The notes under the pieces were generated by a model that saw only the letters and a list, made by a program, of their open reading frames with translations, was not told the DNA's origin and did not search any database. A DNA stretch of 64,000 nt from sequence record NC_019411.1; one strand, written 5' to 3'. The position numbers and the translations under genes are program-made. Of the stretch, positions 8,795 to 62,513 are shown piece by piece (within the stretch, counting starts at the first letter, position 1; the number at the start of each line of letters is the position of its first letter).

Positions 8795-8869
8795 GAAAAG
8801 GGCCTCCGGCGTTGTCGTCTAAGGCCCTTCTAGCGAGTCGGTGTCAGGCTGTCAACACATGTCAGCCAA
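8795..8869 (-). promoter_or_regulatory. Promoter cassette P3
   Basis: TTGGC-9-TTGACA-17-TAGAAG-7-GACGACAACG-CCGGAGG-ATG. Confidence 0.9.
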
Positions 8870-8871
8870 GA

Positions 8872-9483
8872 TCAGGCGGCGTTCGTCACCAGGGTTTCCA
8901 GGCGATCAAAGCCCAGATCGAGGCGACCCCACATCGACGAGGGCGTATGCGGCTTGACCACCTCGGTGAACCGCGCGCGCTCCTTCAGATACATGCGGGC
9001 CATGGGGATGTTCGGCTGGCCGGTCGCCGGGTCCTTGATCGAGGCCTCGACATTGGCGATCCGGTCGGCGAGCTTGAGGATGCAGGCCTTGGGGTGCTCG
9101 CCCAGCTTGCGATAGATGTCCTCGTTGCGGGCCTTGCGGTTGGGGCCGATGCCCGAGACCGCCCAGACCAGCGCCGCGACGTCCTCGCCGAACTTTTCCT
9201 TGATCATCTCCAGCCGCTGCTCGGGCGTCATGTCGAGATGGGTGTCCTCGATCACGTCGTGCAGCTTGGCGGCGGCCGTCCAGGTAAAGCCCAGGAAGCC
9301 GTAGTCGTCGAGGATGCGCTCGACCTTCTGGAGATGGTAGAGATAGGGCTGGCCGGCGTACTGCTGGTCCCCGTGGGCGGCGATGGCGAATTCCGTCGGG
9401 TCTTCCTGGCGCAGCGGCGCGCCCGGCGCCGTCGGAAGGCCCGTCAGGATGGAGGCGAGTTGGTCGAGCGAGGCGTCAGACAT
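8872..9483 (-). CDS. RelA/SpoT-type HD-domain hydrolase (small alarmone hydrolase/Mesh1-like)
   Basis: FAIAAHGDQ..AGQPYLYHL..V...AAAKLHDVIEDT...KLADRIAN. Confidence 0.85.
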   Translation of the reverse strand: MSDASLDQLASILTGLPTAPGAPLRQEDPTEFAIAAHGDQQYAGQPYLYHLQKVERILDDYGFLGFTWTAAAKLHDVIEDTHLDMTPEQRLEMIKEKFGEDVAALVWAVSGIGPNRKARNEDIYRKLGEHPKACILKLADRIANVEASIKDPATGQPNIPMARMYLKERARFTEVVKPHTPSSMWGRLDLGFDRLETLVTNAA

Positions 9484-9889
9484 GGGGCTTCTCGGAGATC
9501 GGGGTGAAGACTTCCAGGCCGTCGACGATCTGCATCAGATGCGTCGGCGGGTGGGCGGGATTGTAGCGGATGTAGCCGGCGAGGCCGCCGTCGATCATCG
9601 CCCCGCCCCGCTCCTTGTAGTCGTGCCGGAAGCGCGAGACCAGGAATGAGCCGTCGGGCATCTCGATCGCCGAGAACTGGGCCTGTCGGATCGAGGCCGC
9701 CGAGGTGATGTAGAGCCCGCCGCCTAGCGGATGGGTGAAGAGCCCGAAGTAGTTGTCGTGGCCCTTCTCGCGGTCCGGCGTCTCGGTGTAGAAGACGTGG
9801 AACGGCCCCTCGCGGTCGGGCAGGTCGTAATAGCCGACGTACTTGGCTTTGTAGTGCTTTTCGGCCCCGGCGATGTTGATGCTGCTCAT
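9476..9889 (-). CDS. Hypothetical protein (MSSINIAG...)
   Basis: ATGA overlap; SRFRHDY...IDGG.GY motif of a common phage family. Confidence 0.75.
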   Translation of the reverse strand: MSSINIAGAEKHYKAKYVGYYDLPDREGPFHVFYTETPDREKGHDNYFGLFTHPLGGGLYITSAASIRQAQFSAIEMPDGSFLVSRFRHDYKERGGAMIDGGLAGYIRYNPAHPPTHLMQIVDGLEVFTPISEKPHV

Positions 9890-10389
9890 GCGACCCTCAG
9901 GAATTCTCCCCAGGCGGGGAGGGCGTGCTTCAGATAGGCGGCGTGCGCCTCGTCCGGCGTCGTGTAGCACCCGAGATAGCGGTACACCCCGTTGATCGTG
10001 ACCTGGGCCTGGAACGGCTTCGTCTTGCTCCGGCTCTTGGTCACGCCCTTGGGAAGCGCGCCGACGTTCGGGCGGTTCACGAGGTTCTGGGACCGCGTCG
10101 CCTTCCGGAGGTTCTTGATCCGATTGTTGCGCCGGTTCAAGTCCTTGTGGTCGACGTCGTGATCGGGCATCACCCCGTGATGGATCGCCCAGGCCACCTT
10201 GTGGGCGGCGATCTGAATTCGCCGGCCGCCATAGGAGACCTTCATCACCCGATAGCCGTCCTTGGTCACCGAGCCGCAGCGCTTGCGGGACTTGGAGCCC
10301 CGCACGGTGATGGCGCCGGTGGCGGGATCGTACTTGTAGCGCGCCCGGAGGAAGTCGACCGGGATCGAAAACTCTGCATCCCCCGACAT
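9886..10389 (-). CDS. HNH endonuclease with C-terminal AP2 domain (homing-endonuclease type)
   Basis: AHKVAWAIHHG...VDHKDLNRRNNRIKNLR..T.SQN; KGV...FQAQVTING..RYLGCY.T..EAHAAY. Confidence 0.88.
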   Translation of the reverse strand: MSGDAEFSIPVDFLRARYKYDPATGAITVRGSKSRKRCGSVTKDGYRVMKVSYGGRRIQIAAHKVAWAIHHGVMPDHDVDHKDLNRRNNRIKNLRKATRSQNLVNRPNVGALPKGVTKSRSKTKPFQAQVTINGVYRYLGCYTTPDEAHAAYLKHALPAWGEFLRVA

Positions 10390-11966: not shown

Positions 11967-13199
11967 CTAGCCCTTCACGCAGAGGACTTGCTTGAGGGTG
12001 TGGACGATGTCCACGAGGTCCTTCTGGGCCTCCATGACCGCGTCGATGTCCTTGTAGGCCATCGGGATTTCGTCGATCACGCCGGCGTCCTTGCGGCACT
12101 CCACGCCCTCGGTGGCCTTGATCTGGTCCTCCAGGGTGAAGGTCGCCTTGGCCTGGGTCCGCGACATCGTCCGGCCCGCGCCGTGCGAGCACGAGCAGAA
12201 CGAGTCCGCGTTGCCCTTGCCGCGCACGATGTAGGACTTGGCCCCCATCGAGCCGGGGATGATCCCGAACTGGTCCTTCTGCGCCGACACCGCGCCCTTG
12301 CGGGTCACGAAGACCCACTCGTCGAAGTGGAATTCCTTCTGGACGTAGTTGTGGTGGCAGTTCACCGCTTCCTTGTCCGTCTTGAACGGCGGCAGGCCCG
12401 ACGCTCGCATGGCCTCCAGGACCCGGACCATCATCATCTCGCGGTTGATCCGCGCGAAGTCCTGGCCCCAGGCGACGGCTTCCACGTAGTCGTGGAACTC
12501 CGGCTCGCCTTCGCAGAGCCAAGCAAGGTCCTTGTCCAGCGGCTTACGCCCGTCACGGCGCAGCATCATCTCCTTGGCCTTCTCGATGAAGATGCGGCCG
12601 ATGGTGTTGCCGACGCCGCGCGAGCCCGAGTGGAGCATCACCCAGACGCGCTGGTCCTCGTCGAGGCAGACCTCGATGAAGTGGTTGCCGCCGCCCAGGG
12701 TGCCCAGTTGGACCACGCTGTTGGCGTTCTTCAGCGCCGGGTACTTCTCGCAGAGCTTGTCGAACCGCGCCTCCAGGCCCGAGTCGACCCACTTGCGCAG
12801 GATCGAGTTGGGGATGCCGCTGCGCCCGTTCCAGCCGCCCGACGGACCCGGCCCGCCGTGCGGGACGGCGTGCTCGATCAGCGAGCGAAGCTTGGCGAGG
12901 CTGTCGGGAAGGTCCGACGCGGTCAGGCTGGTGCGGACCGCCATCATGCCGCAGCCGATGTCGACGCCGACGGCGGCCGGGATGATCGCGCCCTTGGTCG
13001 GGATCACCGAGCCCACGGTCGAGCCGATGCCCATGTGGACATCCGGCATCAGGGCGACATGCGAGTGAATGAAGGGCAGGGCCGCGAGGTTGTGGGCCTG
13101 GACCTGAGCCGGTTGCTCGAAGTTCACGCCGCGAACCCAGGCCTTGATCACCCCGCCATTCCAGCCGTTGATCTCTTCGTAGTGGGTCTCGGCGGACAC
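11967..13199 (-). CDS. rtcB: RtcB RNA 2',3'-cyclic phosphate ligase
   Basis: ALMPDVHMG.G..VG, VGVDIGCGM, GTLGGGNHFIE, HSGSRG.G, HHNY, RKGA, IIPGSMG, SHGAGR.MSR, DEIP.AYKDI. Confidence 0.97.
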   Translation of the reverse strand: MSAETHYEEINGWNGGVIKAWVRGVNFEQPAQVQAHNLAALPFIHSHVALMPDVHMGIGSTVGSVIPTKGAIIPAAVGVDIGCGMMAVRTSLTASDLPDSLAKLRSLIEHAVPHGGPGPSGGWNGRSGIPNSILRKWVDSGLEARFDKLCEKYPALKNANSVVQLGTLGGGNHFIEVCLDEDQRVWVMLHSGSRGVGNTIGRIFIEKAKEMMLRRDGRKPLDKDLAWLCEGEPEFHDYVEAVAWGQDFARINREMMMVRVLEAMRASGLPPFKTDKEAVNCHHNYVQKEFHFDEWVFVTRKGAVSAQKDQFGIIPGSMGAKSYIVRGKGNADSFCSCSHGAGRTMSRTQAKATFTLEDQIKATEGVECRKDAGVIDEIPMAYKDIDAVMEAQKDLVDIVHTLKQVLCVKG

Positions 13200-13204
13200 G
13201 GCGG

Positions 13205-13265
13205 GCTCCTTCTGTGGTGTCGTGATTTACGACTTTTGACCATGCTCCTCGGACGGTGTCAACAC
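13205..13265 (-). promoter_or_regulatory. Promoter cassette P4 (rtcB), variant
   Basis: GTG-TTGACA-17-TCAAAA; leader ACGACACCACAGAAGGAG. Confidence 0.6.
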
Positions 13266-15441: not shown

Positions 15442-15728
15442 CAGGCCGCGAGCCCCCGCTGCTTCAAGGCGACGATCTGCTCGATCTCCTTGAGGATGTG
15501 GTCGGACAGGCGGTCGGTCCGCTCCTTGATGCCAGCCGGGACGCCGATCTTGCACTGACCGATCTCGTGCAGGCGGTCGGAGACGGCCTTCAGGTCGATC
15601 AGGGTGTCGCTGATCAGCACCTCGGCGAGGCCGATGGCCTCGGTCTGGATGGCGGCGATCCGCTGGGCGGTGGTCTGCGCCGATTGGCCCGCGACGAGGG
15701 CCAGGGCGGCGGTGTTCTTCTGGGTCAT
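15441..15728 (-). CDS. Hypothetical protein
   Basis: First gene after P5, AAGGAG SD. Confidence 0.8.
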   Translation of the reverse strand: MTQKNTAALALVAGQSAQTTAQRIAAIQTEAIGLAEVLISDTLIDLKAVSDRLHEIGQCKIGVPAGIKERTDRLSDHILKEIEQIVALKQRGLAA

Positions 15729-15734
15729 GGAGGT

Positions 15735-15790
15735 CTCCTTCGTTGTCGTCGGGCGTGACTTCTAGTTGGGTTCCTGGAGGCTGTCAACAC
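15735..15790 (-). promoter_or_regulatory. Promoter cassette P5
   Basis: GTG-TTGACA-17-TAGAAG-8-GACGACAACGAAGGAG-ATG. Confidence 0.9.
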
Positions 15791-16357: not shown

Positions 16358-17775
16358 ATCAGCGCTCCTTGGCTCGGATCGGCCGGCGCGTAGACGGCGC
16401 GGTTGATGGTGGTCTCCGGCTCGCCCGAGCGCTTGTTGGCGCCGTGACGCTTGATCGTGGCCCGGATGGCGTAGCGCTTGCCGGCCTCGGGACGGTACTT
16501 GCCGGTGTGGAAGTTCACCACCGCCGAGCCGTCGTCGCAGCGGATGGCCACGATGCAGGTCGTCTCGCCGAAGTCGTTGGTGTAGAGGTTGGTCCGCACG
16601 ACCTCGCCCACGAAGTCCACGCGCTGGCCCTCGGCGGCGTCGAGGTGCTTGGCAGGCGGGCGCTGGGGAGCGTCGGCCTTCTTGCGGGCGTCCTCCTCGC
16701 GCTCCAGGACGCGGCCGACCGACAGACCGACAGCGGCGACGATCACCCCGATGCGCTTGACCAGGACGAAATCTTCCTGGGCGAGCACCATCTTGATGTT
16801 CTCGTGGAACGGATTGCCCGGCTTCAGCGAGCGGATGTAGTCGGTGAAGCCCTCGCGGTCGAATTCCGGCTCGAAGCCCTTGTAGGAGTCGATGATCTCC
16901 TGGTTGCGCTTGTGCTCGTAGTCCGACAGGTCATAGCCCCGGTTGCCGAACATCAGCAGGCCGACATGCTTGCGCGAGTCTTCCTTGCTGTAGCCGCCGA
17001 GCCGGCGCGCCACGCGGTACGAGGTCCGCAGGAGTTCGCCCAGATCGACGTACTCCTCGCCCTTGCGCCAGCCGCCCGGATCACCCTTGAAGTTGTTCAG
17101 GTCATCCCAGAACGACAGCATGCGGACCGGATCGGCCCCCATATAGGCTTTCAGGCACGAGGCCCCGATCATCTTGATCCCGTCGGCGGTCTCGCAGACG
17201 AAGGTGTGTTTGCGGCGCTGGTTGACGCCGCAGTGGGCGCACTCGCCAGCGTGTACACGCATCCCTTCCACGACGTCGTTGGCGGTCTTGTCGACCAGCT
17301 TGAGGTAGTGCCCCGTCTTCTCGGCGGCTTCGTAGATGCCCAGGACGCGGCCCTTCTCGCCGACCATCGGCGGAACCGACAGGGTGATCTCGATGCGGCG
17401 CACCACCATGGCCTCGTCGCTCAGATAGGGCGAGGGAATGTCGACCACCTTACGCTCCAGGACCTCCAGGGTCTGGGCGCCGTGGGCGGCCCGCTTCTGG
17501 AGCTTGGCCAGCAGGCGCATGAAGCGTTCCTCGACGGCGAAGCCCATCATGAAGGTCAGGACGGCTTGGCCGTCGCGCACGCCTTCCTGGGCCTCCCACA
17601 TGGCGGTCCGGTGAGCCTCGCGCTCCTGCTCGTCCTCGAAGATCGACACGCCCCTGGCGGTCACGACCTCGACGCCGTCGACCAGCACGCTGGCCTGATC
17701 GGCGACCGTCTCGGGACGCTCGCCGTAGGTTTCCAGCATGTAGTCCTGGTAGCTGCCTTCGAATTCGCCAAACAT
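16354..17775 (-). CDS. Large hypothetical: CxxC..G.SC zinc motif and probable C-terminal OB-fold
   Basis: ECAHCGVNQRRK...IGASCL; C-terminal GQRV.F.GEV...ATIKRH...ETTINR. Confidence 0.75.
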   Translation of the reverse strand: MFGEFEGSYQDYMLETYGERPETVADQASVLVDGVEVVTARGVSIFEDEQEREAHRTAMWEAQEGVRDGQAVLTFMMGFAVEERFMRLLAKLQKRAAHGAQTLEVLERKVVDIPSPYLSDEAMVVRRIEITLSVPPMVGEKGRVLGIYEAAEKTGHYLKLVDKTANDVVEGMRVHAGECAHCGVNQRRKHTFVCETADGIKMIGASCLKAYMGADPVRMLSFWDDLNNFKGDPGGWRKGEEYVDLGELLRTSYRVARRLGGYSKEDSRKHVGLLMFGNRGYDLSDYEHKRNQEIIDSYKGFEPEFDREGFTDYIRSLKPGNPFHENIKMVLAQEDFVLVKRIGVIVAAVGLSVGRVLEREEDARKKADAPQRPPAKHLDAAEGQRVDFVGEVVRTNLYTNDFGETTCIVAIRCDDGSAVVNFHTGKYRPEAGKRYAIRATIKRHGANKRSGEPETTINRAVYAPADPSQGALI

Positions 17776-17781
17776 GATCGG

Positions 17782-17847
17782 CTCCTCTCGCTGTCGTGAG
17801 GGAGCTTGTACGGGCTCACGCCGATGCTGTCAACACTCTAACGCCAA
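17782..17847 (-). promoter_or_regulatory. Promoter cassette P6
   Basis: TTGGC-9-TTGACA-17-TACAAG-7-ACGACAGCGAGAGGAG-ATG. Confidence 0.85.
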
Positions 17848-20718: not shown

Positions 20719-21077
20719 TGGTCCGACACCTTCGCCAGTTGCTTTTCCAGTTCGGCGCGCAGTTCGGCGGTGCTCAGGCCCAGGCGCTCCTTCATGAACG
20801 CCACCGCCTCGGCGGCGGTCTCGAACGAGCGGGTCTCGGCATCGGTGCTGTCACGCAGGCCGAGGATTTCGACCACGCCCCAGATCGTCGCCCAGGCGAC
20901 GGCGATCAAGGCCGCCACCGTGATGGCAAAGCCGAAGTTGAACTGGCGCGCGGCGCTCAGTTCCACCGCCTCGGCCGCCGTCCAGGCCACTGCGACCATG
21001 CTCACGGAGGCGAGATGGAGCAGGGCGCCCCTGCGGGTGTGGGTCGGGCGGACGGTCAGGGTCATCTTGTCTTGCAC
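20715..21077 (-). CDS. Membrane protein
   Basis: First gene after P7; two hydrophobic segments. Confidence 0.7.
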   Translation of the reverse strand: MQDKMTLTVRPTHTRRGALLHLASVSMVAVAWTAAEAVELSAARQFNFGFAITVAALIAVAWATIWGVVEILGLRDSTDAETRSFETAAEAVAFMKERLGLSTAELRAELEKQLAKVSDQ

Positions 21078-21083
21078 GAGGGT

Positions 21084-21151
21084 CTCCTCTGCGGTTGTCG
21101 TCGCCCGCCTCTTAGGCCAAGGCCGAAGCCTTGTCAACACATTCAAGCCAA
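21084..21151 (-). promoter_or_regulatory. Promoter cassette P7
   Basis: TTGGC-9-TTGACA-17-TAAGAG-6-GACGACAACCGCAGAGGAG-GTG. Confidence 0.88.
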
Positions 21152-22856: not shown

Positions 22857-23026
22857 CGCAGTAGCTCTCCGTCGGCGATCCGGATGTCGCTCAGGGGATA
22901 GTCCTGGAAGAAGGCGCGCAGCCGCTGGCGCAGCATCCCCTCGACAGGCTCGGCGTTGTTCAAGGTCTCGAAGAGGTCCTCGAACATCTGGCGCTCATTG
23001 GCGCGTAAGGGTCGGGTCTTCGGCAC
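22853..23026 (-). CDS. 57-aa hypothetical (MPKTRPLRANERQMF...)
   Basis: Hand translation; GTG after P8 SD AAGGAGG; ATGA overlap. Confidence 0.7.
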   Translation of the reverse strand: MPKTRPLRANERQMFEDLFETLNNAEPVEGMLRQRLRAFFQDYPLSDIRIADGELLR

Positions 23027-23031
23027 GGGAC

Positions 23032-23096
23032 CTCCTTCGTTGTCGTCATGCGGCTTCTAGGGCGACTTTACCGGATTGTCAACACATTCCAGCCAG
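23032..23096 (-). promoter_or_regulatory. Promoter cassette P8
   Basis: CTGGC-9-TTGACA-17-TAGAAG-6-GACGACAACGAAGGAGG-GTG. Confidence 0.9.
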
Positions 23097-23903: not shown

Positions 23904-24921
23904 CGGCGACCTCCTCGACCTCTTCCTCGCTCGGGGCGATCGTCGAGCCCGAATATTCCTGGAGGTGGTCGACCGCCTTCTGGGCCAGCGACGCGGCGGT
24001 GAAGATGAAGCGCTTGTCGCCCTTCAGGACCTTCAGCCAGGAGGCGACATAGGAGGCGTGGTCTTCGCGGACTTCCGGGGTCAGGCCGAGGATGGCGCAG
24101 AGGAAGGCCGAGCCCAGTTCGGCGACCAGTTCCTCGGCGGCGTAGGCCTCGTCACCGAAGCGCTTGCCGAACTCGCGGTTCAGGCGGTCCTCGCGGCCGG
24201 TCCAGTGGACGAACTCGTGGCCGAGGGTGGCGTAGTAGCTCTCCTCGTCGCGGAAGGCGTCGAACTGGGGCATCTGGATGAAGTCCAGGTGCGGCGAGAA
24301 GAAGGCCCGGTGACCGCCGTGGCGCACCTCGGCGCCCGTGGCGGCGAAGAACTTCTCGACCGCCGCGTTGCGCTCCAGGACCCGCTTGGCTTCCTCGGCG
24401 GGCGTCGCCGGCGCCGGGGCGGGCTTCTGGTAGAAGCGCTCGGGCAGGCCGTCGATCTGCTCGACATTGAACACCAGATAGGACTTCAGGAACGGGATCA
24501 TCCGTTCGACGTCCTTGCCGTTGGCGTCCTTCTCGGTCTTCTTGAACTTCGAGGCGTAGACGATCAGTTCGGACTTCTCGCCCTTGCGGACCTGACCACC
24601 CAGGTCCCTGGCTTGGTTGTAGGTCATCCAGGTCGGGTTGGTGTAGCCGCGCTCCTGGGCGGCGGCCCACAGGAGGACCACGTTGATCCCGGTGTAGCGC
24701 TGGCCGGTCACCCGGCGGGGATAGATCGCCATGCCGGCCGAGGCGCCGCCGGGAGCCGACCACGGCTTCAACCAGGGACGCACGCCAGCGTCGAGCGCGG
24801 CGACGATCTTGTCGGTGATCTTCTGATAGAGGTCGACCTTCACGGTTTCGGTCGAGGCCTTGCCGGTCTCCTTGGTGGAGCGCTTGGCGGGCTTCTTCTT
24901 GGCGGCGGTGGTCTTGGTCAT
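23890..24921 (-). CDS. ardC: ArdC-family antirestriction protein (DUF1738 ssDNA-binding + zincin domain)
   Basis: YQKITDKIVAALDAGVRPWLKPW, Y.GINV..LW, WMTYNQA..LGGQVRKGEK, VFNVEQIDGL, YYATLGHE..HWTG...RLNR, YA.EELVAELGSAFL. Confidence 0.93.
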   Translation of the reverse strand: MTKTTAAKKKPAKRSTKETGKASTETVKVDLYQKITDKIVAALDAGVRPWLKPWSAPGGASAGMAIYPRRVTGQRYTGINVVLLWAAAQERGYTNPTWMTYNQARDLGGQVRKGEKSELIVYASKFKKTEKDANGKDVERMIPFLKSYLVFNVEQIDGLPERFYQKPAPAPATPAEEAKRVLERNAAVEKFFAATGAEVRHGGHRAFFSPHLDFIQMPQFDAFRDEESYYATLGHEFVHWTGREDRLNREFGKRFGDEAYAAEELVAELGSAFLCAILGLTPEVREDHASYVASWLKVLKGDKRFIFTAASLAQKAVDHLQEYSGSTIAPSEEEVEEVADAAA

Positions 24922-24925
24922 CAGG

Positions 24926-24991
24926 GCCTCCTCGTTGTCGTCGAGGGGGTTCTAGCCGGCGACCGCGACCTTGTCAACACTCTCGCGCCAG
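24926..24991 (-). promoter_or_regulatory. Promoter cassette P9 (ardC)
   Basis: CTGGC-9-TTGACA-17-TAGAAC-6-GACGACAACGAGGAGG-ATG. Confidence 0.9.
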
Positions 24992-26117: not shown

Positions 26118-26371
26118 GACTTGAGGCTCTGGCAGGCGAACGTGATCACGTCGCCGAGGGTGTTGAAATCCTCGGGGAACTGGACCGGCTCAGGGACGGC
26201 GAAGTCCTCCTCCAGGCACATCATCAACTCGATGATGTCCAGGCTGTCGAGGCCCAGATCATCTTCCAGCCGTAGCCCCTCGTCCATATCGTCGAGGGTG
26301 TACGACCGGTCGGTGATCGCATGGGCGTAGTCGAAGGTCGCCGCCTTGATCTCGTCGCGCGTGAAGGTCAC
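26114..26371 (-). CDS. acpP: Acyl carrier protein-like protein
   Basis: 85 aa, acidic; L.EDDLGLDSLDIIELMMCLEEDF...F.TLGDVI matches ACP incl. phosphopantetheine Ser in DSL. Confidence 0.85.
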   Translation of the reverse strand: MTFTRDEIKAATFDYAHAITDRSYTLDDMDEGLRLEDDLGLDSLDIIELMMCLEEDFAVPEPVQFPEDFNTLGDVITFACQSLKS

Positions 26372-27102
26372 GGCTCTCCCCCTGGTGTCGTTTCGGCGCT
26401 TCTAGCCCTCCCAAGCAGAGCCGTCAACACATCAGCGCCACGCCAGACCCAGGATAGGCTCAGGATGAGGTCGCGGTCCTCGTAGGCGGCGCTGCGCCCG
26501 GTGATCACCTTGATCGCCGAGAGCGGGCCAAACCGCCAGAAGATGACCGTGCGCGAGTCGTTACGGCCCGGCAGATGCTCCAGCAGCACGCGGCGCTTGA
26601 TCGCCAAATGTCGCTGCTCCCTGTGGAGGACGAGCGCGACCTTGCGCGTCGGGTCAGACCCGAACCACCGGCGCCAGTAGCCCGGATTGTCGATGTTGTC
26701 GAACAGCCGGCCGATCCGCTTGCTGACGGGGCGAAGCCCAGGCTCGCGCCGGCGCACGCTCAGCGGCGGAAAGGTGCAAGGCGGCCACTCCGGAAGCAGG
26801 CGCAGGCGCAGCCTCCGGAATTCCCACGCCGGCATGGCGTTGTCCTTGGTGTTGTTGCACGCCACGCAGGCCGCCGCCAGATTGCTCTCGTGGTTCGATC
26901 CGCCCTCGGCCCTAGCCTCCAGGTGCTCGATCGTCACCTCGTCGGGCTCCAGCTTGCCACCGCCCCGGCCGATCCGCCGGCGATAGGCCATCTGCCCCGT
27001 GCAATAGGTGCAGAGGCCACCCGCCTCCAGGAAGAGGCGGTGGCGGCGGTTCGGCGCGGCGGGCGGTAGCGGGTCCTGGACCAGCACCTCAGATGAGGAC
27101 AT
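26368..27102 (-). CDS. HNH endonuclease
   Basis: CTYC...TIEHL..R..GGSN..SNLAAAC..CN..K. Confidence 0.85.
   Translation of the reverse strand: MSSSEVLVQDPLPPAAPNRRHRLFLEAGGLCTYCTGQMAYRRRIGRGGGKLEPDEVTIEHLEARAEGGSNHESNLAAACVACNNTKDNAMPAWEFRRLRLRLLPEWPPCTFPPLSVRRREPGLRPVSKRIGRLFDNIDNPGYWRRWFGSDPTRKVALVLHREQRHLAIKRRVLLEHLPGRNDSRTVIFWRFGPLSAIKVITGRSAAYEDRDLILSLSWVWRGADVLTALLGRARSAETTPGGEP
26376..26441 (-). promoter_or_regulatory. Promoter cassette P10 (ACP), inside HNH 3' end
   Basis: GTGGC-9-TTGACG-17-TAGAAG-ACGACACC-GGGGGAG-GTG. Confidence 0.75.
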
Positions 27103-29002: not shown

Positions 29003-29586
29003 GCCTCGATCTCCTCGAACCGCCCATCCATGAATTCGGCCTCGCGCCGCCCCCACATCTGGCCCTCGGCATCGAGGTAGGTCAGCAGGGTCTCGTCATC
29101 GAGCACCGGGGTCTCGCACTGGATGCGGATCGTCCCGACCAGGGCGTATTCGCCGCCGCGCTTCTTGTGGCGGAAGCGCCGCATGCCGCGCGGAAGCTCC
29201 GCCAGGAAGGCCTTCAGGGCGTCCGCCACCTTGGCGACGCCGTGCGGGAAGTGCGAGCCCGGCCCGCGCACCCATTGATAGATCGTCGCCAGGGCGAAGC
29301 GCCCGGCGGCGATCTCGCCCGTGGGGTCCTTGCGGATCATGTCCGGCGCGTAGTCTTCGAGATAGTTCGTTCCGAGGATCGCCATGCAGCGGGCCTCCTC
29401 CACCGAGGTCGGCAGACGCAGGTGATCGCGATCCAGGCGGTCGGCCTCGGCGAGCGACTTGATCACCCCGACCAGGATCGCCGCCTTCTCGGCGTGCCAC
29501 TGCCGGCCACCGGGCTCTGCGGCGCGCTCGGCGTGGTAGAGGTGGTAGTCCAGTATCTCGTGGACGTCTTCGCTCTGGCGGGACAT
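28999..29586 (-). CDS. Hypothetical protein with C-terminal DUF1653-like segment
   Basis: RRFRHKKRGGEY.LVG...TY...WGR...EF.DGRF. Confidence 0.7.
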   Translation of the reverse strand: MSRQSEDVHEILDYHLYHAERAAEPGGRQWHAEKAAILVGVIKSLAEADRLDRDHLRLPTSVEEARCMAILGTNYLEDYAPDMIRKDPTGEIAAGRFALATIYQWVRGPGSHFPHGVAKVADALKAFLAELPRGMRRFRHKKRGGEYALVGTIRIQCETPVLDDETLLTYLDAEGQMWGRREAEFMDGRFEEIEA

Positions 29587-29591
29587 AAGGT

Positions 29592-29647
29592 TCCTTCCGT
29601 TGTCGTCACCCGCGACACTAGATGGTCGCGGGTGCGCGTGTCAACAC
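29592..29647 (-). promoter_or_regulatory. Promoter cassette P11
   Basis: GTG-TTGACA-18-TAGTGT-7-GACGACAACGGAAGGAA-ATG; -10 sits in the loop of a 10-bp IR. Confidence 0.85.
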
Positions 29648-39851: not shown

Positions 39852-39857
39852 CCTGCC

Positions 39858-41789: not shown

Positions 41790-42044
41790 ATGCTGACCAA
41801 GGACGAGATCACCTTCGCGGGCCTGATCAAGGCCATGGAGGACGCCCGACGCACCGCCAAGGCGGCGGGCGATCTCGTCAGCACGGCCGAGATCGACCGC
41901 TGGTTCAAGGAACACGCGCCGATCATCCGGGAGGTCCGCGACAAAGCCGAGGCCGACGAATTCGACGCTGGCGCGAGAGTGTTGACAGCCTCTGAGGAAG
42001 GGGCTAAAGACACCCTCGACGACAGCGAAAGGAGCCTGCCTTGA
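41790..42044 (+). CDS. Hypothetical protein; 3' end carries P16
   Basis: ORF track; AGGA SD. Confidence 0.65.
   Translation: MLTKDEITFAGLIKAMEDARRTAKAAGDLVSTAEIDRWFKEHAPIIREVRDKAEADEFDAGARVLTASEEGAKDTLDDSERSLP
41968..42034 (+). promoter_or_regulatory. Promoter cassette P16
   Basis: CTGGC-9-TTGACA-17-TAAAGA-7-GACGACAGCGAAAGGAG-TTG. Confidence 0.88.
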
Positions 42045-45104: not shown

Positions 45105-45172
45105 CTGGCGCGAAAGTGTTGACAAGGTTCTGGGAACTCCTCTATACCCACGCTCGACGACAACGAGAGGAG
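45105..45172 (+). promoter_or_regulatory. Promoter cassette P17
   Basis: CTGGC-9-TTGACA-18-TATACC-7-GACGACAACGAGAGGAG-ATG. Confidence 0.88.
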
Positions 45173-45177
45173 TTCCC

Positions 45178-46938
45178 ATGGCCGAGACCATGTCCCTGAG
45201 TTTCCGGATCGAAGGCGCCGCCCTGGTGGAACGGGCGCGCGATCGCGTCATCGAAGGTAACTGGGAGCACGGCCTGCGCATCCTGGTCGAGGGCCTGCAC
45301 GGCATGTCCTACGAACTCGCGATCGACATCCTGCTCGGCAAGCACACCCTGGGCGGCTGGTCCTCGGACCCCGAGGGCGTCTATCTCACCGACCAGGACC
45401 CGGAGGACGAGACTTTCAAGCGCTACAAGGAAACCCTCGACTACCAGTTCGCCGGCGTCTTCAAGCTGGACGACGGCCGGATCATGCGCCCCTACGCGGT
45501 GGTCGACAGCTTCTCCAAGATCGACTTCGACTCTAGGGTCCGCTTCCTGCGGCTGGCCCAGGGCTCGGACCCGGTGTTCTCGCGCCCCAAGCGCTATCAC
45601 GACCCCCGCGCCGAGATCAACGGCGAGGAGATCGACTGGGCCTATCGCGCCCTGCACTACGCCGACGAGCCGACCCAGGACATCGTCCGTCTGGTCCGCA
45701 TGGAGGGCTTCCACCCCACGATCCGCGCGGCGGTCCTGTTCAAGGAAGTCCGCGACTACCCCAAGCTCCTGCTCCCGAAGGTCGAGACCGACGCCCAGAA
45801 GGCCGTCGACGTGGCGATCAAGGCCCAGCGCGGCCTCTCCAAGCGCGGGCACGTCTACGAGTATGGCGCTGGTCAGGACTTCGACAAGGAGCACTACAAG
45901 ACCACCATGGGGATCGATCAGGTCCCCACCGCGTGGTCCGTGCGCAATCCGAAGTACGTCGATCCCGACGCCAAGTTCGTGAAGGACACCCTGGCCGAGA
46001 TCGACGGCGACAAGCGCCCGGCGCCGGCCGGTGATTACGCCGGCGCCATGAACCGGATGATCAAGGATGAGATGGACGGCGGCATGGACATCAGCGCGGC
46101 CGTCGCCATGACCCAGGCCAAGATGGCGCTGCTGGGCGGCATGGCCGAGGACCCCGAGCAGCGCCTGCGGGCGATCAACGACGCCTACGCCGCCAAGTAC
46201 GAGAAGGCCGAGGGCCGCAGCGTCGAGGAGTACCGCAAGGCCATCATCGCCCAGGCCGGCGATGATTTCTTCGATCTCGCGTACACGGATGTGAACGGCA
46301 AGGACGTCGTCCTGAAGGTCCCGACCGCGCCGTTCGAGCAATGGGCGCTCTGGCGCACGGCCGGCTCCCACCTCGCCAAGCCCTGGAAGCGGGTGACCTA
46401 CACCGGCTTCAAGACGTTCGGCGATGATCCCTATCACACCGACTGGGTGCTGGGCGCTGGGCTCAATCCCGAAGATTGGCCGATCATCGAGGCCGACAAC
46501 CCGCCGCTCCATAAGGCCGCCTGGGACAAGCGCTTCCGGCTGGCCGAGGAGAAGCTGGGCGGCAACATGCGCGTCCTGCTCGGCAAGGGCTTCGTGACCG
46601 GCAAGATCGTGATGCTCAAGCCGGGCGAGGCCCTGTCACCGGGCGAGATCGGTGTGATCCGCAACGCCGGCCCCGACTACGTTCAGGCCGCCCAGAGCGC
46701 GATCGAGCACAACACCGCCTTGATCTGCGAGAACGGCGGCAGCGTCGCCCACCTCGTGGTCGAGTACCTGGACAAGCCCCTGCGCCTGACCCGGATCGAG
46801 AACGCGCGCAAGATTTTCAAGGACGGCATGACCGTCTACCTCGACTTTGACAAGTCGACGCGAGAGATCGCCAAGGGCGGCCTGGGGCCGAGCCCTGCCG
46901 ATCTTGGCCTCGACACGGAATGGGAGATTTTCGAATGA
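45178..46938 (+). CDS. 586-aa protein with C-terminal PEP-utilising-enzyme mobile (phosphohistidine swivel) domain
   Basis: G.G.V.GK....L..GEI.V....GPDY..A....ALICENGGSVAHL..........I.NA.....DG..V.LD. Confidence 0.7.
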   Translation: MAETMSLSFRIEGAALVERARDRVIEGNWEHGLRILVEGLHGMSYELAIDILLGKHTLGGWSSDPEGVYLTDQDPEDETFKRYKETLDYQFAGVFKLDDGRIMRPYAVVDSFSKIDFDSRVRFLRLAQGSDPVFSRPKRYHDPRAEINGEEIDWAYRALHYADEPTQDIVRLVRMEGFHPTIRAAVLFKEVRDYPKLLLPKVETDAQKAVDVAIKAQRGLSKRGHVYEYGAGQDFDKEHYKTTMGIDQVPTAWSVRNPKYVDPDAKFVKDTLAEIDGDKRPAPAGDYAGAMNRMIKDEMDGGMDISAAVAMTQAKMALLGGMAEDPEQRLRAINDAYAAKYEKAEGRSVEEYRKAIIAQAGDDFFDLAYTDVNGKDVVLKVPTAPFEQWALWRTAGSHLAKPWKRVTYTGFKTFGDDPYHTDWVLGAGLNPEDWPIIEADNPPLHKAAWDKRFRLAEEKLGGNMRVLLGKGFVTGKIVMLKPGEALSPGEIGVIRNAGPDYVQAAQSAIEHNTALICENGGSVAHLVVEYLDKPLRLTRIENARKIFKDGMTVYLDFDKSTREIAKGGLGPSPADLGLDTEWEIFE

Positions 46939-48759: not shown

Positions 48760-48762
48760 GCG

Positions 48763-48814
48763 TTGACAACACTTTCGCGCCAACATAGAACCGCCCTCGA
48801 CGACAACGAGGAGG
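48763..48814 (+). promoter_or_regulatory. Promoter cassette P18 (upstream element inverted into spacer)
   Basis: TTGACA-17-TAGAAC-7-GACGACAACGAGGAGG-ATG; minus strand of spacer reads TTGGC-9-TTGTCA. Confidence 0.88.
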
Positions 48815-48819
48815 CTTCG

Positions 48820-49203
48820 ATGAAGCTCGCGACCCAAGACCGCACCGATCCGCGCCTGAACATGCGCTACCGCCTCGCCAAGGCGGTGTTCTATTACGGC
48901 GGCCCGCACGAGTACCCGATCCACCTGAACGACTGGTGGAACGAGGTGACGCCGGCCGACGTCGAGGACCGCATCTCCGAACTCTGCCGCGAACTGTCCA
49001 AGCTGTCGGGCCAGACCCTGGCGCCGGCGACCTTCTACGAGCGGATGAAGCTGGGCTTCGTCGACCTCCCGGAAGTGAAGGACGAGGACTTCGCCGCCCT
49101 GTCGGAGACGACTCGCAACAACCTGCTCGCCATGCAGGACCGCTTCTCGGTCCACGGGAGCGGCTTCATGCTCTACTGGAACATCGTCAAAGAGGAGGCC
49201 TGA
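48820..49203 (+). CDS. Hypothetical protein (MKLATQD...)
   Basis: ATG after P18 SD. Confidence 0.75.
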   Translation: MKLATQDRTDPRLNMRYRLAKAVFYYGGPHEYPIHLNDWWNEVTPADVEDRISELCRELSKLSGQTLAPATFYERMKLGFVDLPEVKDEDFAALSETTRNNLLAMQDRFSVHGSGFMLYWNIVKEEA

Positions 49204-50264: not shown

Positions 50265-50329
50265 CTGGCGTTCTTGTGTTGACAAGGCCGGCGCCGCTGG
50301 CCTAGAACGTCGTGGACGACAACAGGAGG
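50265..50329 (+). promoter_or_regulatory. Promoter cassette P19
   Basis: CTGGC-9-TTGACA-18-TAGAAC-6-GACGACAACAGGAGG-ATG. Confidence 0.88.
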
Positions 50330-50333
50330 GACC

Positions 50334-50690
50334 ATGCCGCTCTACGACTTTCCGACCGGACCGACCACGATGGAGGACATCGAGGCGTTCGTCGCCGGCG
50401 CCCAGGCGGTGGTGACCGCCCAACTGGCCAAGGCCTTTCCCGGCGTGTCCGCGCCGGTGCTGGAGATCGCGCCGGTTCACCCGAGCAGCCAGTTCGCCAA
50501 AATCGTCGCGGTCGACGCCAGCCAGCGCTCGGCCTGGGCGTTCGTCCGGCTGGAGAACGGCCTGATCTACAAGCCCTCGTCGTGGAAGGTGCCGGCCAAA
50601 CATGCGCGTGGCACGATCCACACCGCCGCGCACGGCGCCGAGTACGTCGACTGGACCGGCCCGCGCTACGTGAAGGACCTGCGTCGATGA
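50334..50690 (+). CDS. Conserved phage hypothetical
   Basis: S.WAFV...G.IYKP.SWK.PAKH.RG.I. Confidence 0.8.
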   Translation: MPLYDFPTGPTTMEDIEAFVAGAQAVVTAQLAKAFPGVSAPVLEIAPVHPSSQFAKIVAVDASQRSAWAFVRLENGLIYKPSSWKVPAKHARGTIHTAAHGAEYVDWTGPRYVKDLRR

Positions 50691-57628: not shown

Positions 57629-57693
57629 TTGGCGTTAGAACGTTGACAGCCTCGGCGTGATGTCATAAAAGCCTCCTCGACGACAACGAGGAG
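57629..57693 (+). promoter_or_regulatory. Promoter cassette P20
   Basis: TTGGC-9-TTGACA-17-TAAAAG-7-GACGACAACGAGGAGG-ATG. Confidence 0.9.
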
Positions 57694-57699
57694 GCCCAC

Positions 57700-58119
57700 A
57701 TGGCTTACGCAATTCCGGACCTGAGCACGTTCACGTTCCACGACCCCAAGGTCGAACGGTTCGCCAAGGCGATGATCTCGACGATCGAGACTGCTCAGAC
57801 CATCCTCACGGCCTTCGCCAACGATCTCGCCGACAATCCTCTTCAGGCGTTCGAGCATAGCTACGGCGCCAAGATGGCCGCCGCCCACAGGGACGTCGCC
57901 AAGGGGCTGCTCAACGAGGTTCTCGACGCGCTGCTGCACGGTCAGGACAAGACCTGGGCCTACATCGGCCAGGACCTGCGCGAGCGGCTGATGTATCGCG
58001 TGATCTACGCGGCCTCGAACCCGCCGCGCTCGACCAACGTCGAAGGCAACGACATGGCCCGCTTCGTCCTGCGCGCCGAGGCCGACATGCTCGACCGCAT
58101 GACCAAGAGCCGCTTCTGA
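57700..58119 (+). CDS. Hypothetical protein
   Basis: First gene after P20. Confidence 0.8.
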   Translation: MAYAIPDLSTFTFHDPKVERFAKAMISTIETAQTILTAFANDLADNPLQAFEHSYGAKMAAAHRDVAKGLLNEVLDALLHGQDKTWAYIGQDLRERLMYRVIYAASNPPRSTNVEGNDMARFVLRAEADMLDRMTKSRF

Positions 58120-58651: not shown

Positions 58652-58717
58652 TTGGCGTTCAAGTGTTGCCAAAGCTGATCTGATCAGCTAGAACCCTCGC
58701 CGACGACAACGAGGAGG
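58652..58717 (+). promoter_or_regulatory. Promoter cassette P21
   Basis: TTGGC-9-TTGCCA-17-TAGAAC-7-GACGACAACGAGGAGG-ATG; spacer holds IR AGCTGATC-T-GATCAGCT. Confidence 0.88.
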
Positions 58718-58721
58718 CCCC

Positions 58722-58916
58722 ATGCCGCACCTGAGCAAGACGCCGTTCGACTTCGACTTCACCAGTGACGCTTTGGCGGCAACGCTGGAATTCGAGCGCA
58801 ACACGACCGAGTTCTACCGCTACGAGACAGTCTTCACATCCGGTCGTGCGGCAACTCACGTTCTCGTCATGGAAGAAGACGGGAATTTCGTCGGCTTCGT
58901 CTCGGGTGAAGCCTGA
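58722..58916 (+). CDS. Hypothetical protein
   Basis: First gene after P21. Confidence 0.75.
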   Translation: MPHLSKTPFDFDFTSDALAATLEFERNTTEFYRYETVFTSGRAATHVLVMEEDGNFVGFVSGEA

Positions 58917-61984: not shown

Positions 61985-62003
61985 CGGAAGGACCTGAAAG
62001 ACC

Positions 62004-62426
62004 ATGAGCACCGATCTCTTCGAAATCGCCGCGCGCGAGAAGTTCCGCTTCGAGAGCCCCAAAGGCCTCCTGGGCGTGGAAGAACTGTTCGACCTGCCGC
62101 TGACCAGCACCGTCGCCGGCAAGGCCAACCTGAACGACATCGCCGTCGACCTGTTCAAGCAGATCAAGGACCTCGACAACATCTCGTTCGTCACGCCCAA
62201 GAAGGTCGACCCCTCGATCGGTCAGCGCCTGGACATCGTCAAGCGGGTGATCGAGATCAAGCAGGCCGAGAACGCGGCCAAGCTGAAGACCGCCCAGGAC
62301 AAGGAAACCCTGCGCATCCTCGACGAGGCGATCGCCGCCAAGAAGTCCGAGAAGATCGCCGGCACCTCGCTGGAAGACCTGGAAGCCCAGCGCGCGGCCC
62401 TGCTCTCGGGCGGCGCCTCGGCCTAA
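62004..62426 (+). CDS. Conserved hypothetical partner of upstream gene
   Basis: FE.A.R.K.RF.S.KG.L..E.LFDLPL...LN.IA; C-terminal coiled coil. Confidence 0.75.
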   Translation: MSTDLFEIAAREKFRFESPKGLLGVEELFDLPLTSTVAGKANLNDIAVDLFKQIKDLDNISFVTPKKVDPSIGQRLDIVKRVIEIKQAENAAKLKTAQDKETLRILDEAIAAKKSEKIAGTSLEDLEAQRAALLSGGASA

Positions 62427-62452
62427 GCCTCCGGGCGGGCTGACATAGGCGC

Positions 62453-62513
62453 TTGACAACACTCTCGCGCCAACATAGAAGGGCCTCCGACGACAACGCC
62501 GGAGGCCCTTTTC
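62453..62513 (+). promoter_or_regulatory. Promoter cassette P23 (apparent P18/P3 chimera)
   Basis: TTGACA-17-TAGAAG-7-GACGACAACG-CCGGAGG-ATG. Confidence 0.9.

What the first reader, a model, noticed from the sequence alone, without database searches (positions are those of the whole stretch)
8810..62498. Standardised 5' mRNA leader GACGACAACG at the predicted start of 16 early transcripts
Seen: 6-8 nt after the -10 hexamer comes (G)ACGACA(A/G)C followed almost at once by an AGGAG-type SD and the start codon. This holds at P3, P5, P6, P7, P8, P9, P11, P12, P15-P21 and P23, with variants ACGACACC (P4, P10) and ACAACGACAG (P13). Established: sigma70 transcription starts about 6-8 nt past the -10, so this would be the +1 to +10 sequence. 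Inference: a phage barcode on mRNA 5' ends. It could allow selective translation or protection during host shut-off, fast promoter escape, antitermination loading for the very long operons, or binding of a repressor over +1.
Basis: partly seen in the sequence, partly recalled or inferred. Interest (0 to 1): 0.75.

Follow-up and report, generated by a model that had tools for sequence, protein, structure and literature searches.

The report
Conserved start sequence of phage early promoters
About twenty strong early promoters of the Caulobacter phage CcrSwift all begin their transcripts with nearly the same ten bases (GACGACAACG) just ahead of the ribosome-binding site; the pattern is real, conserved and apparently undescribed, but its job is still unproven.

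Summary
The window is Caulobacter phage CcrSwift, bases 124001-188000. ACGACARC occurs 23 times against 4.6 expected. Sixteen copies, plus the three named variants, lie 6-9 nt after the -10 of one promoter cassette: YTGGCG-N5-GTGTTGACA-N17-cTAGAA-N6-7-GACGACAACG-AGGAGG-N5-ATG.

The hexamers match the Caulobacter RpoD consensus. Canonical spacing, and two leaderless genes behind sister promoters, put +1 on the conserved G. The decamer goes with the promoter, not the SD. In Swift-Rogue orthologous pairs it is as conserved as the hexamers (91% against 61% for spacers). A GACGA core recurs at the same place in CcrColossus and in a Brevundimonas phage.

New here: the untranscribed bases just upstream of +1 are complementary to the SD. 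Read-through RNA therefore folds into a hairpin with the decamer as its loop, and two copies are annotated terminators. RNA started at +1 stays open.

The most likely reading is a cis-acting start-site, initial-transcribed and leader element of the early promoter class, and I hold it loosely. A factor-read 5' tag or an operator at +1 is not excluded. TgrL binding, a motif shared with middle promoters, and PeSL-type shuffling found no support. No transcription start sites have been mapped.

The parts
8792..8858 (-). Class-A early promoter module upstream of gp165: -35 at 8850-8855, leader GACGACAACG at 8810-8819, ATG at 8794.
   Evidence: gene table
8796..8831 (-). Hairpin that forms only in read-through RNA, followed by UUUU. 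The leader is its loop and the SD lies in its 3' arm. The depositors annotated 8800-8827 as a rho-independent terminator.
   Evidence: annotation; -17.8 kcal/mol, z -3.8
13197..13265 (-). Class-A module upstream of the RtcB-like gene gp175. Variant leader cACGACACCA at 13215-13224; the -10 is atypical.
15726..15790 (-). Class-A module upstream of gp180: leader GACGACAACG at 15741-15750.
17773..17836 (-). Class-A module upstream of gp183: leader CACGACAGCG at 17789-17798. The upstream arm GCTCCCTC pairs with GAGAGGAGC.
21075..21140 (-). Class-A module upstream of gp190: leader GACGACAACC at 21093-21102.
23024..23085 (-). Class-A module: leader GACGACAACG at 23038-23047. It points to the GTG at 23026 as the start of gp194.
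24919..24980 (-). Class-A module upstream of the ArdC-like gene gp198: leader GACGACAACG at 24933-24942.
26369..26430 (-). Class-A module upstream of gp203: variant leader AACGACACCA at 26383-26392, -35 TTGACG.
29584..29647 (-). Class-A module upstream of gp211: leader GACGACAACG at 29598-29607.
31737..31800 (-). Class-A module upstream of gp215: leader GACGACAACA at 31751-31760.
36060..36125 (-). Class-A module upstream of gp225. It heads the operon that holds the early gene tgrL (34425-34802). Variant leader CACAACGACA at 36075-36084.
   Evidence: tgrL identified from the primer in PMC10688885 S5
39796..39860 (+). Class-A module upstream of gp231, the first of the plus-strand arm: leader GACGACAACG at 39835-39844.
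41979..42043 (+). Class-A module upstream of gp239: leader GACGACAGCG at 42018-42027. The Colossus orthologue carries GACGACAACG.
45116..45180 (+). Class-A module upstream of gp245: leader GACGACAACG at 45156-45165.
48760..48822 (+). Class-A module upstream of gp251: leader GACGACAACG at 48799-48808. The spacer holds the inverted TTGGCGCGAAAGTGT block.
50276..50336 (+). Class-A module upstream of gp255: leader GACGACAACA at 50315-50324.
57640..57702 (+). Class-A module upstream of gp272: leader GACGACAACG at 57679-57688. In read-through RNA a 9-bp hairpin forms at 57671-57695 (GCCUCCUCG / CGAGGAGGC) with loop ACGACAA.
   Evidence: (-17.5 kcal/mol, z -6.7; RNA from +1: z +1.4)
58663..58724 (+). 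Class-A module upstream of gp275: leader GACGACAACG at 58702-58711, -35 TTGCCA.
62450..62516 (+). Class-A module upstream of gp281: leader GACGACAACG at 62489-62498.
62477..62512 (+). Terminator-type hairpin that forms only in read-through RNA (GGGCCUCCG ... CGGAGGCCC then UUUU). The leader is its loop. The depositors annotated 62484-62511 as a rho-independent terminator.
   Evidence: annotation; -25.8 kcal/mol, z -6.3; RNA from +1: z +0.8
6812..6855 (-). Sister promoter without the leader (GTGTTGACA-N17-TAGTGT). The ATG of gp161 lies 8 nt after the -10, so a leaderless mRNA is predicted. It serves as an internal yardstick for +1.

Best explanation
The decamer is the transcription start site, the initial transcribed sequence and the 5' leader of one class of about 24 near-consensus promoters of the host RpoD (sigma-73) type. 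These promoters drive the early gene arms of CcrSwift and its relatives.

Shown from sequence: the cassette is fixed as GTGTTGACA-N17-cTAGAA-N6-7-(Y)GACGACAACG-AGGAGG-N5-ATG. The decamer is as conserved as the -35 and -10 hexamers, while the spacers drift. It goes with the promoter, not with the SD.

Inferred: RNA polymerase starts at the conserved G. The first ten bases are purine-rich, lack U and do not pair, so they act in cis in three ways. They fix the start site, they ease escape from a very tightly bound consensus promoter, and they hand the ribosome a short open leader of 19-25 nt with a perfect SD.

A second layer is shown as complementarity and inferred as function. The untranscribed discriminator just upstream of +1 is an anti-SD. 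RNA reading through from an upstream unit therefore folds into a hairpin with the decamer as its loop and the SD in the 3' arm. That hairpin masks the SD, or terminates where a U-tract follows. RNA initiated at the promoter lacks the 5' arm and stays open.
For: - **Enrichment and position:**
- **Promoter type:** the hexamers match the Caulobacter RpoD consensus. The spacer is 17 nt in 15 of 18 modules, the discriminator is 6-7 nt in 15 of 18, and there is a Y before the G in 19 of 24.
- **Yardstick for +1:** two sister promoters have an ATG at the same distance from the -10.
- **Linked to the promoter, not the SD:** at Swift 189090 the decamer is at +1, but a hairpin insert pushes the SD about 45 nt downstream. 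No copy precedes an internal gene.
- **Selection:** in 10 orthologous Swift-Rogue pairs, identity is 99% for the -35, 91% for the leader, 85% for the -10, 66% for the discriminator and 61% for the spacer.
- **Depth of conservation:** the GACGA core sits at the same distance from the -10 in Colossus, where GACGATCA occurs in 11 of 16 promoters although the -10 region differs (TTTCTTTACA). It also occurs in Brevundimonas phage Bajun as GACGAC followed by variable bases. This fits a constraint set by the shared host machinery.
- **Open leader:** the RBS opening energy is 6.5 kcal/mol with the native leader and 7.6 with random 9-mers, lower in 19 of 21 transcripts (Wilcoxon p = 2e-4).
- **Anti-SD:** pairing of the upstream 11 nt with the SD region beats shuffled arms in Swift, Rogue and Colossus; no set of shuffled arms paired as well as the native arms (0 of 500 in each phage).
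- **Start site decides the fold:** read-through RNA folds at z -6.3, -3.8 and -6.7, while RNA from +1 folds at z +0.8 and +1.4. Two sites were independently annotated as terminators.
- **Early timing:** tgrL lies in one of these operons and is an early gene. About 41% of phiCbK genes are early (PMC10688885).
Against: - No TSS has been mapped, so +1 is inferred from geometry.
- A purely cis-acting effect on escape or accessibility rarely demands one exact 8-10-mer. The accessibility gain is modest (mean 30th percentile among random 9-mers) and cannot explain near-invariance.
- The discriminator length varies from 6 to 9 nt, so the motif cannot start at exactly +1 everywhere.
- A few orthologous promoters have lost the motif and presumably still work (Rogue 144701 and 153400).
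- The promoter-specific part of the anti-SD pairing is only marginal (partner permutation p = 0.09, 0.02, 0.12). Only 2 of 18 hairpins in the window carry a U-tract.
- Host promoters could not be surveyed.
Confidence: 0.45

Rival explanations
1. The decamer is a 5'-terminal RNA tag read in trans. A phage or host protein, nuclease or RNA recognises 5'-GACGACAACG on early transcripts. It then stabilises them, translates them preferentially, or later silences or cleaves them as a class. The functional analogues are T4 RegA and RegB acting on early mRNAs.
For: Near-invariance of 8-10 specific bases is typical of sequence-specific recognition. The motif is confined to the early promoter class and is absent from the roughly 20 class-B promoters of the structural and replication modules. 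It is predicted to be single-stranded at the extreme 5' end. Early transcripts fall after 15 min (PMC10688885).
Against: No candidate reader was identified. The sequence after GACGA differs between genera, so any reader would have to co-evolve or read only 5 nt. Nothing in Rfam matches. No complementary RNA was seen.
Confidence: 0.2
2. The decamer is a DNA operator over +1. A phage-encoded DNA-binding protein made early or in the middle period sits on ACGACAAC and switches the whole early promoter class off. It works like an asymmetric stoperator or like Cro-type repression.
For: A position over +1 is ideal for repression. The site is asymmetric, has one orientation and has many copies, like mycobacteriophage stoperators. 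The phage encodes several HTH or winged-helix proteins, namely gp105, gp145, gp146, gp193 and TgrL. The early class declines after 15 min.
Against: The TgrL position weight matrix scores the leaders at -4 to +3 bits, below the 99.9th percentile of the window at 6.7 bits. The ACGACA / TGTCGT resemblance to the class-B upstream element does not covary in Colossus, where the pair is TGCCAG against GACGATCA. There are no copies away from +1. Conservation of the GACGA core across host genera, while the -10 region changes, fits host machinery better than a phage repressor.
Confidence: 0.15
3. The primary function is the hairpin. The cassette is a composite terminator/attenuator plus promoter, of the PeSL type. 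The decamer is conserved as its loop, for example as a processing or recombination site, and the cassettes also mediate modular gene shuffling.
For: Anti-SD/SD complementarity is present in three genera. The hairpins are strong, and two are annotated terminators. The cassettes punctuate a region of small genes of unknown function.
Against: Most stems are short (0-5 bp in about two thirds of modules) and lack a U-tract. The loop is better conserved than the arms. The one clean indel examined (phiCbK lacks window 20165-23752) has both break points inside genes, not in cassettes. In PeSLs the stem-loop lies upstream of the promoter rather than across +1 (PMC2839356).
Confidence: 0.12
4. The decamer has no function of its own. 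It persists because the cassettes are recent copies of one another, or are homogenised by gene conversion.
For: The cassettes are repeated and similar. Two of them (8792-8858 and 62450-62516) are nearly identical from the -10 to the ATG.
Against: Within cassettes the spacer and discriminator have diverged freely, while the decamer and hexamers have not. The core persists in genera whose -10 region differs.
Confidence: 0.05

Closest known systems
Conserved downstream (initial transcribed) region of coliphage T5 early promoters such as P_N25
   Same: These are very strong promoters read by host sigma-70. The sequence from +1 to about +20 is class-specific and purine-rich, and it governs promoter escape and output rather than polymerase binding.
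   Different: Here the conserved stretch is shorter (8-10 nt) and almost invariant. It is GC-rich and fused directly to a standard SD. It is preceded by an untranscribed anti-SD. Any effect on escape is untested.
PeSLs, the promoter-early stem-loop cassettes of T4-type phages (PMC2839356, PMC4122927)
   Same: These are repeated composite cassettes that join a near-consensus early promoter to a stem-loop blocking transcription from upstream. They are concentrated among small early genes of unknown function.
   Different: In PeSLs the stem-loop lies upstream of the promoter and has no conserved loop or leader. Here the hairpin straddles +1 and its 3' arm is the SD. No link to indel junctions was found in the one case tested.
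Start-associated sequences (SAS/ESAS) of Cluster K mycobacteriophages (PMC3203893)
   Same: This is an asymmetric, single-orientation repeat of about 13 bp that includes the SD. It sits just upstream of start codons in the non-structural half of the genome, is conserved across subclusters, and has no known function.
   Different: SAS is tied to the start codon (3-7 bp away) and is not described as part of a promoter. The decamer here is tied to the promoter and TSS, and can be separated from the SD.
Stoperators of mycobacteriophage L5 and Cluster A (named in PMC3203893; details from my own knowledge)
   Same: These are many copies of an asymmetric site in one orientation relative to transcription.
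   Different: Stoperators are bound by the immunity repressor of a temperate phage and lie throughout operons. Here the phage is virulent, all copies are at +1, and no binder is known.
T4 RegB and RegA control of early mRNAs (reviewed in PMC3014915; details from my own knowledge)
   Same: This is class-wide post-transcriptional control of early messages through sequences at or next to the SD.
   Different: No RegA or RegB homologue was sought or found, and no cleavage or binding has been shown. The resemblance is functional and speculative only.

Membership tests
Caulobacter RpoD (sigma-73 / sigma-70 type) promoter | -35 TTGaCgS and -10 GCtANAWC at the proper spacing | tested here: met
   The -35 is (GTG)TTGACA and the -10 is (G)CTAGAAS. 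The hexamer spacer is 17-18 nt in 18 of 18 modules. The consensus is taken from PMC8144410.
Caulobacter RpoD (sigma-73 / sigma-70 type) promoter | Transcription starts about 7 nt after the -10, at the conserved G or A | not testable with these tools
   This rests on geometry only, plus the yardstick of two leaderless sister promoters. No TSS data were found.
Initial-transcribed-sequence element controlling promoter escape (T5 N25 type) | Changing +1 to +20 alters the productive/abortive ratio without changing polymerase binding | not testable with these tools
   This needs in vitro transcription with Caulobacter RNA polymerase.
PeSL composite promoter/terminator cassette | Near-consensus early promoter repeated among small early genes | tested here: met
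PeSL composite promoter/terminator cassette | Adjacent stem-loop that terminates upstream transcription | tested here: inconclusive
   Complementarity is significant in three phages. Only 2 of 18 window copies have a U-tract. The stem straddles +1 instead of preceding the promoter.
PeSL composite promoter/terminator cassette | Indel and replacement junctions coincide with cassettes | tested here: not met
   The phiCbK deletion of window 20165-23752 ends inside gp189 and gp197. A Ccr29 insertion lies near, but not in, the 21137 cassette. Only these two events were examined.
Start-associated sequence (SAS) | Repeat lies a fixed 3-7 bp from start codons, independent of promoters | tested here: not met
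   The decamer is always 6-9 nt after a -10. One copy lies about 55 nt from the start codon. None precedes an internal gene.
Intrinsic (rho-independent) terminator | GC-rich hairpin followed by a U-tract | tested here: met
   Met only for 8796-8831(-) and 62477-62512(+), at -17.8 and -25.8 kcal/mol with UUUU, both annotated by the depositors. Not met for the other 16 copies.
TgrL / XRE-family operator | Match to the ChIP-seq-derived TgrL position weight matrix | tested here: not met
   The leaders score -3.8 to +3.2 bits, while the 99.9th percentile of the window is 6.7 bits. The matrix comes from the S2 Table of PMC10688885.
Stoperator-type repressor site | A specific repressor binds the asymmetric site, and copies also lie inside operons | tested here: not met
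   The copy-distribution part is not met: all promoter-independent copies are at chance level. Binding cannot be tested with these tools.
Known structured RNA family (Rfam), including antitermination RNAs | Covariance-model match at gathering score | tested here: not met
   There are 0 matches in the whole window.

The most novel reading that the evidence does not exclude
The first 5-10 nt (GACGA[C]...) form a class-specific 5'-end identity tag on the early transcripts of Dolichocephalovirinae. A trans-acting host or phage factor would read it to coordinate the fate of about 24 transcription units at once, for example by selective translation or protection during host shut-off followed by class-wide silencing. 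The anti-SD upstream of +1 would ensure that only RNAs started at the promoter display the tag and an open SD.
Probability: 0.2. Interest if true: 0.75.

Novelty: new variant of a known kind. Interest (0 to 1): 0.45.

Why it matters
phiCbK is the standard phage of the Caulobacter cell-cycle field, yet its promoters have not been described in the literature I could search. This cassette defines the early transcription units of a subfamily of phages of 200-350 kb. It predicts about 24 start sites to the base and corrects at least one gene start.

It also offers compact, strong, standardised promoter/5'-UTR parts for Caulobacter engineering. The design in which the start site decides the fold is a neat way to insulate tandem units: the same DNA gives a hairpin or terminator in read-through RNA and an open leader in RNA initiated at the promoter.

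If the decamer proves to be read by a factor, it would be a simple handle on class-wide control of early mRNAs in a phage that relies on host RNA polymerase.

Tried and rejected
- **TgrL operator.** I scanned the window with the published TgrL matrix. The leaders score far below the top sites, so this was rejected.
- **One protein acting at both promoter classes.** The idea was a protein that represses early promoters at ACGACA (+1) and activates class-B promoters at TGTCGT (-45). It was suggested by the reverse-complement match in Swift. In Colossus the class-B element is TGCCAGGAATC while the early start is GACGATCA, so there is no covariation. Rejected as a likely coincidence, although only two Colossus class-B sites were seen.
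- **Symmetric operator CCTCG-N7-CGAGG.** The arms are less conserved than the centre, and the arm spacing varies from 7 to 27 nt. Rejected.
- **Sigma-54 reading of the upstream TGGCG-N5-GTGTTG.** The GG/GC spacing does not fit by inspection. Rejected.
- **MotA-type middle activator.** gp145 is 49% identical to a Brevundimonas phage protein annotated as MotA. Pfam and PHROGs give no MotA domain. A low-confidence model (pLDDT 62) resembles PadR/MarR winged helices only weakly, with TM about 0.35. It remains an uncharacterised DNA-binding candidate.
- **PeSL-type shuffling.** Of two indels examined, one is clearly not cassette-mediated.
- **Host and other-genome survey.** The viral scan found multi-copy loci only in Karma, Rogue and CcrBL10, plus chance-level singletons.
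- **Per-gene expression classes.** The phiCbK table (S3 of PMC10688885) is cut off in the stored copy.
- **E. coli-type promoter scan.** It finds none of these promoters, because it demands T at the last -10 position.
- **GcrA rules.** The GAATC in class-B promoters does not fit YGAKTCK or the preferred positions.
Full report
**Identity of the window.** The window is 100% identical to Caulobacter phage CcrSwift (JX100809.1), bases 124001-188000. This is a phiCbK-like siphophage of the Dolichocephalovirinae. The region consists of two divergent arms of small, mostly uncharacterised genes: a minus arm up to about 39.7 kb and a plus arm after it. I fetched the rest of the genome in pieces for comparison.

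**Check of the observation.** ACGACARC occurs 23 times, against 4.55 +/- 2.09 in shuffles. GACGACAACG with one mismatch or fewer occurs 30 times against 6.96. Sixteen exact copies lie in the same place within one promoter cassette, eight on each strand, always pointing with the local genes. The seven remaining copies are inside genes and match the chance expectation.

The cassette reads YTGGCG-N5-GTGTTGACA-N17-cTAGAA-N6-7-(Y)GACGACAACG-AGGAGG-N5-ATG. In 18 modules parsed automatically:
- the spacer is 17 nt (15 modules) or 18 nt (3);
- the discriminator is 6-7 nt in 15 modules (range 6-9);
- the predicted 5' UTR is 19-25 nt.

Genome-wide there are about 24 such cassettes, between genome positions 113.6 and 193 kb, plus one variant at about genome position 10.2 kb, just past the left terminal repeat. 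About seven promoters of the same -35/-10 type lack the decamer.

**Where transcription starts.** The hexamers match the Caulobacter RpoD consensus TTGaCgS / GCtANAWC (PMC8144410). An E. coli-type scan misses them because the -10 ends in G or C. Canonical geometry puts +1 on the conserved G, which is preceded by a pyrimidine in 19 of 24 cassettes. Two sister promoters have the start codon itself 8 nt after CTAGAN: window 6852(-) for gp161, and genome 200250(+). They therefore predict leaderless mRNAs, which calibrates +1 to the same position. No TSS mapping for any phiCbK-like phage was found, so +1 remains an inference.

**The decamer belongs to the promoter, not to the SD.** At genome 189090 the decamer sits at the usual distance from the -10. 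A conserved hairpin is inserted after it, and the SD follows about 45 nt later. The Rogue orthologue of this promoter carries the same insert. No copy precedes any of the many internal genes.

**Selection.** In ten orthologous Swift-Rogue promoter pairs (the genomes are about 78-82% identical in the aligned parts), identity by segment is as follows:

| Segment | Identity |
|---|---|
| -35 | 99% |
| leader decamer | 91% |
| -10 | 85% |
| upstream element | 74% |
| discriminator | 66% |
| spacer | 61% |
| bases after the leader | 59% |

Rogue has about 20 copies. A viral-collection scan found multi-copy loci only in Karma, Rogue and CcrBL10.

More distant relatives keep only a core. CcrColossus uses TTGACG-N11-TTTCTTTACA-N7-GACGATCA in 11 of 16 promoters, GACGAAC in 3 and GACGACAACG in 1. 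Brevundimonas phage Bajun uses GACGAC followed by variable bases. GACGA at +1 is therefore the deep feature, and CAACG is specific to the lineage.

The 11 nt upstream of +1 are complementary to the SD region. Mean duplex energies are:

| Phage | Native (kcal/mol) | Shuffled arms (kcal/mol) |
|---|---|---|
| Swift | -8.4 | -6.2 |
| Rogue | -9.4 | -6.2 |
| Colossus | -8.0 | -5.4 |

In none of 500 shuffle sets per phage did the shuffled arms pair as well as the native arms. Permuting partners between promoters gives p = 0.09, 0.02 and 0.12, so part of the signal is promoter-specific and part lies in the consensus CCTCG-ACGACAA-CGAGG.

RNA that includes the discriminator folds strongly at 62476-62513 (-25.8 kcal/mol, z -6.3), at 8795-8832 (-17.8, z -3.8) and at 57666-57699 (-17.5, z -6.7). 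RNA starting at the predicted +1 is less structured than shuffles (z +0.8 and +1.4). Two of these hairpins carry UUUU and were annotated by the depositors as rho-independent terminators. So the same DNA gives a hairpin or terminator in read-through RNA and an open leader in RNA initiated at the promoter.

**Leader accessibility.** I replaced the nine bases after the initiating nucleotide with random 9-mers of genome composition. This raises the energy needed to open the SD-start region in 19 of 21 transcripts (6.5 against 7.6 kcal/mol, Wilcoxon p = 2e-4). The native leader ranks only at the 30th percentile on average. Openness explains its A/C-rich, U-free composition but not its exact sequence.

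**Candidate binders and rival ideas tested.**
- TgrL, the early XRE repressor, is encoded at window 34425-34802 in one of these operons. Its published ChIP-seq matrix scores the leaders at -4 to +3 bits, below the 99.9th percentile of the window at 6.7 bits.
- A second promoter class (TGTCGTGAATC abutting TTGACA, about 20 copies in the structural, lysis and replication modules) contains the reverse complement of ACGACA. The Colossus counterpart is TGCCAGGAATC, so the resemblance does not covary with the early start.
- gp145, whose Brevundimonas phage homologue is annotated as MotA, shows no MotA domain and only a weak PadR/MarR-type fold.
- The one clean indel examined has break points inside genes, not in cassettes.
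- Rfam finds nothing in the window.
- The bacterial-genome scan gave only scattered singletons and was truncated, so host use of the motif remains unknown.

**Interpretation.** What is shown: there is a real, strongly selected, promoter-linked element of 8-10 nt at the predicted +1 of the early promoter class; it has a core conserved across genera; and it is coupled to an anti-SD just upstream.

What is inferred: it acts in cis to fix the start, aid escape from a near-consensus promoter and provide a short open leader, while the anti-SD masks or terminates read-through. I give this 0.45. Near-invariance of one exact sequence is more than such effects usually require. For that reason a trans-acting reader of the RNA 5' end (0.2) or a DNA operator at +1 (0.15) stays open. 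A hairpin-first, PeSL-like reading gets 0.12, and mere hitch-hiking gets 0.05.

**Comparison with what is known.**
- The element works most like the class-specific downstream region of T5 early promoters (from my own knowledge).
- It resembles PeSL cassettes in joining an early promoter to a stem-loop (PMC2839356, PMC4122927).
- It resembles Cluster K start-associated sequences in being an asymmetric repeat next to the SD of non-structural genes (PMC3203893).
- It fails the defining position rules of both PeSLs and SAS.

I therefore rate it a new variant of a known kind, of moderate interest. It is useful for annotation, for phiCbK biology and as a parts source. It would become more interesting if a factor turns out to read the tag.

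Noticed in passing
CcrSwift genome outside the window: L004 18704, 21675, 24756, 29741, 32488, 46659 (+); L005 (genome 56054, 64956, 71093, 77653 +; 86239, 93309 -); L006 (genome 100561, 106586 -; 112614, 115033 +); L003 (genome 203999 +): A second promoter class of about 20 copies has (A)TGTCGTGAATC directly abutting TTGACA. It heads the structural, lysis and replication units and contains a CcrM GANTC site. Four or five copies form a CACGAC-N7-GTCGTG palindrome, and many are followed by GTTAACC, which resembles a CtrA half-site. The Colossus equivalent is TGCCAGGAATCTTGACA. This is probably the middle/late promoter class with an activator site.
   Followed up: partly
window 48763-48790 (+), 62453-62480 (+); L003 about 1053-1080 (genome 189053): Most early cassettes have YTGGCG-N5 upstream of GTGTTGACA. 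In three promoters the same block lies inverted inside the -35/-10 spacer (TTGACAACACTYTCGCGCCAACATAGAA), and the upstream copy is missing.
   Followed up: no
window 6812-6855 (-); L003 about 12250-12290 (genome 200250, +): Two promoters of the early type place an ATG 8 nt after the -10, which predicts leaderless mRNAs (gp161 and gp313). Both genes begin ATGACGG.
   Followed up: partly
window 22987-23047 (-): The cassette at 23082 and its SD point to the GTG at 23026 as the start of gp194. That is 39 nt upstream of the annotated start at 22987.
   Followed up: partly
L003 1098-1131 (genome 189098-189131); Rogue L050 about 30618-30650: A conserved hairpin (GTCCGAAAT ... ATTTCGGAC) is inserted between the decamer and the SD of gp287. 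The stems are conserved between Swift and Rogue while the loop differs. It may be a regulatory 5' UTR element.
   Followed up: no
L004 1834-1935 (left terminal repeat; repeated at genome 211079-211180): Four direct repeats of GCGTTTTGACG lie about 16-38 nt apart in the terminal repeat. The arrangement looks like iterons or a protein-binding array.
   Followed up: no
L006 19290-19889 (genome 119290-119889, gp145): This conserved 199-aa protein is 49% identical to a Brevundimonas phage Bajun protein annotated as 'middle transcription regulatory protein MotA'. Pfam and PHROGs give no MotA domain. The AF2 model (pLDDT 62) has a winged-helix core that matches PadR/MarR regulators weakly.
   Followed up: partly
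window 20165-23752: phiCbK (JX100813) lacks this 3.6-kb stretch, which holds gp190-gp196 and two early cassettes. The break points lie inside gp189 and gp197. Ccr29 carries an extra stretch of about 0.9 kb next to the 21137 cassette.
   Followed up: partly
window 59864-59955 (+): A promoter of the same -35/-10 type (GTGTTGACG-N17-TAAGAA) upstream of gp279 lacks the decamer. It has GACGGTCACG instead, followed by a long leader.
   Followed up: no
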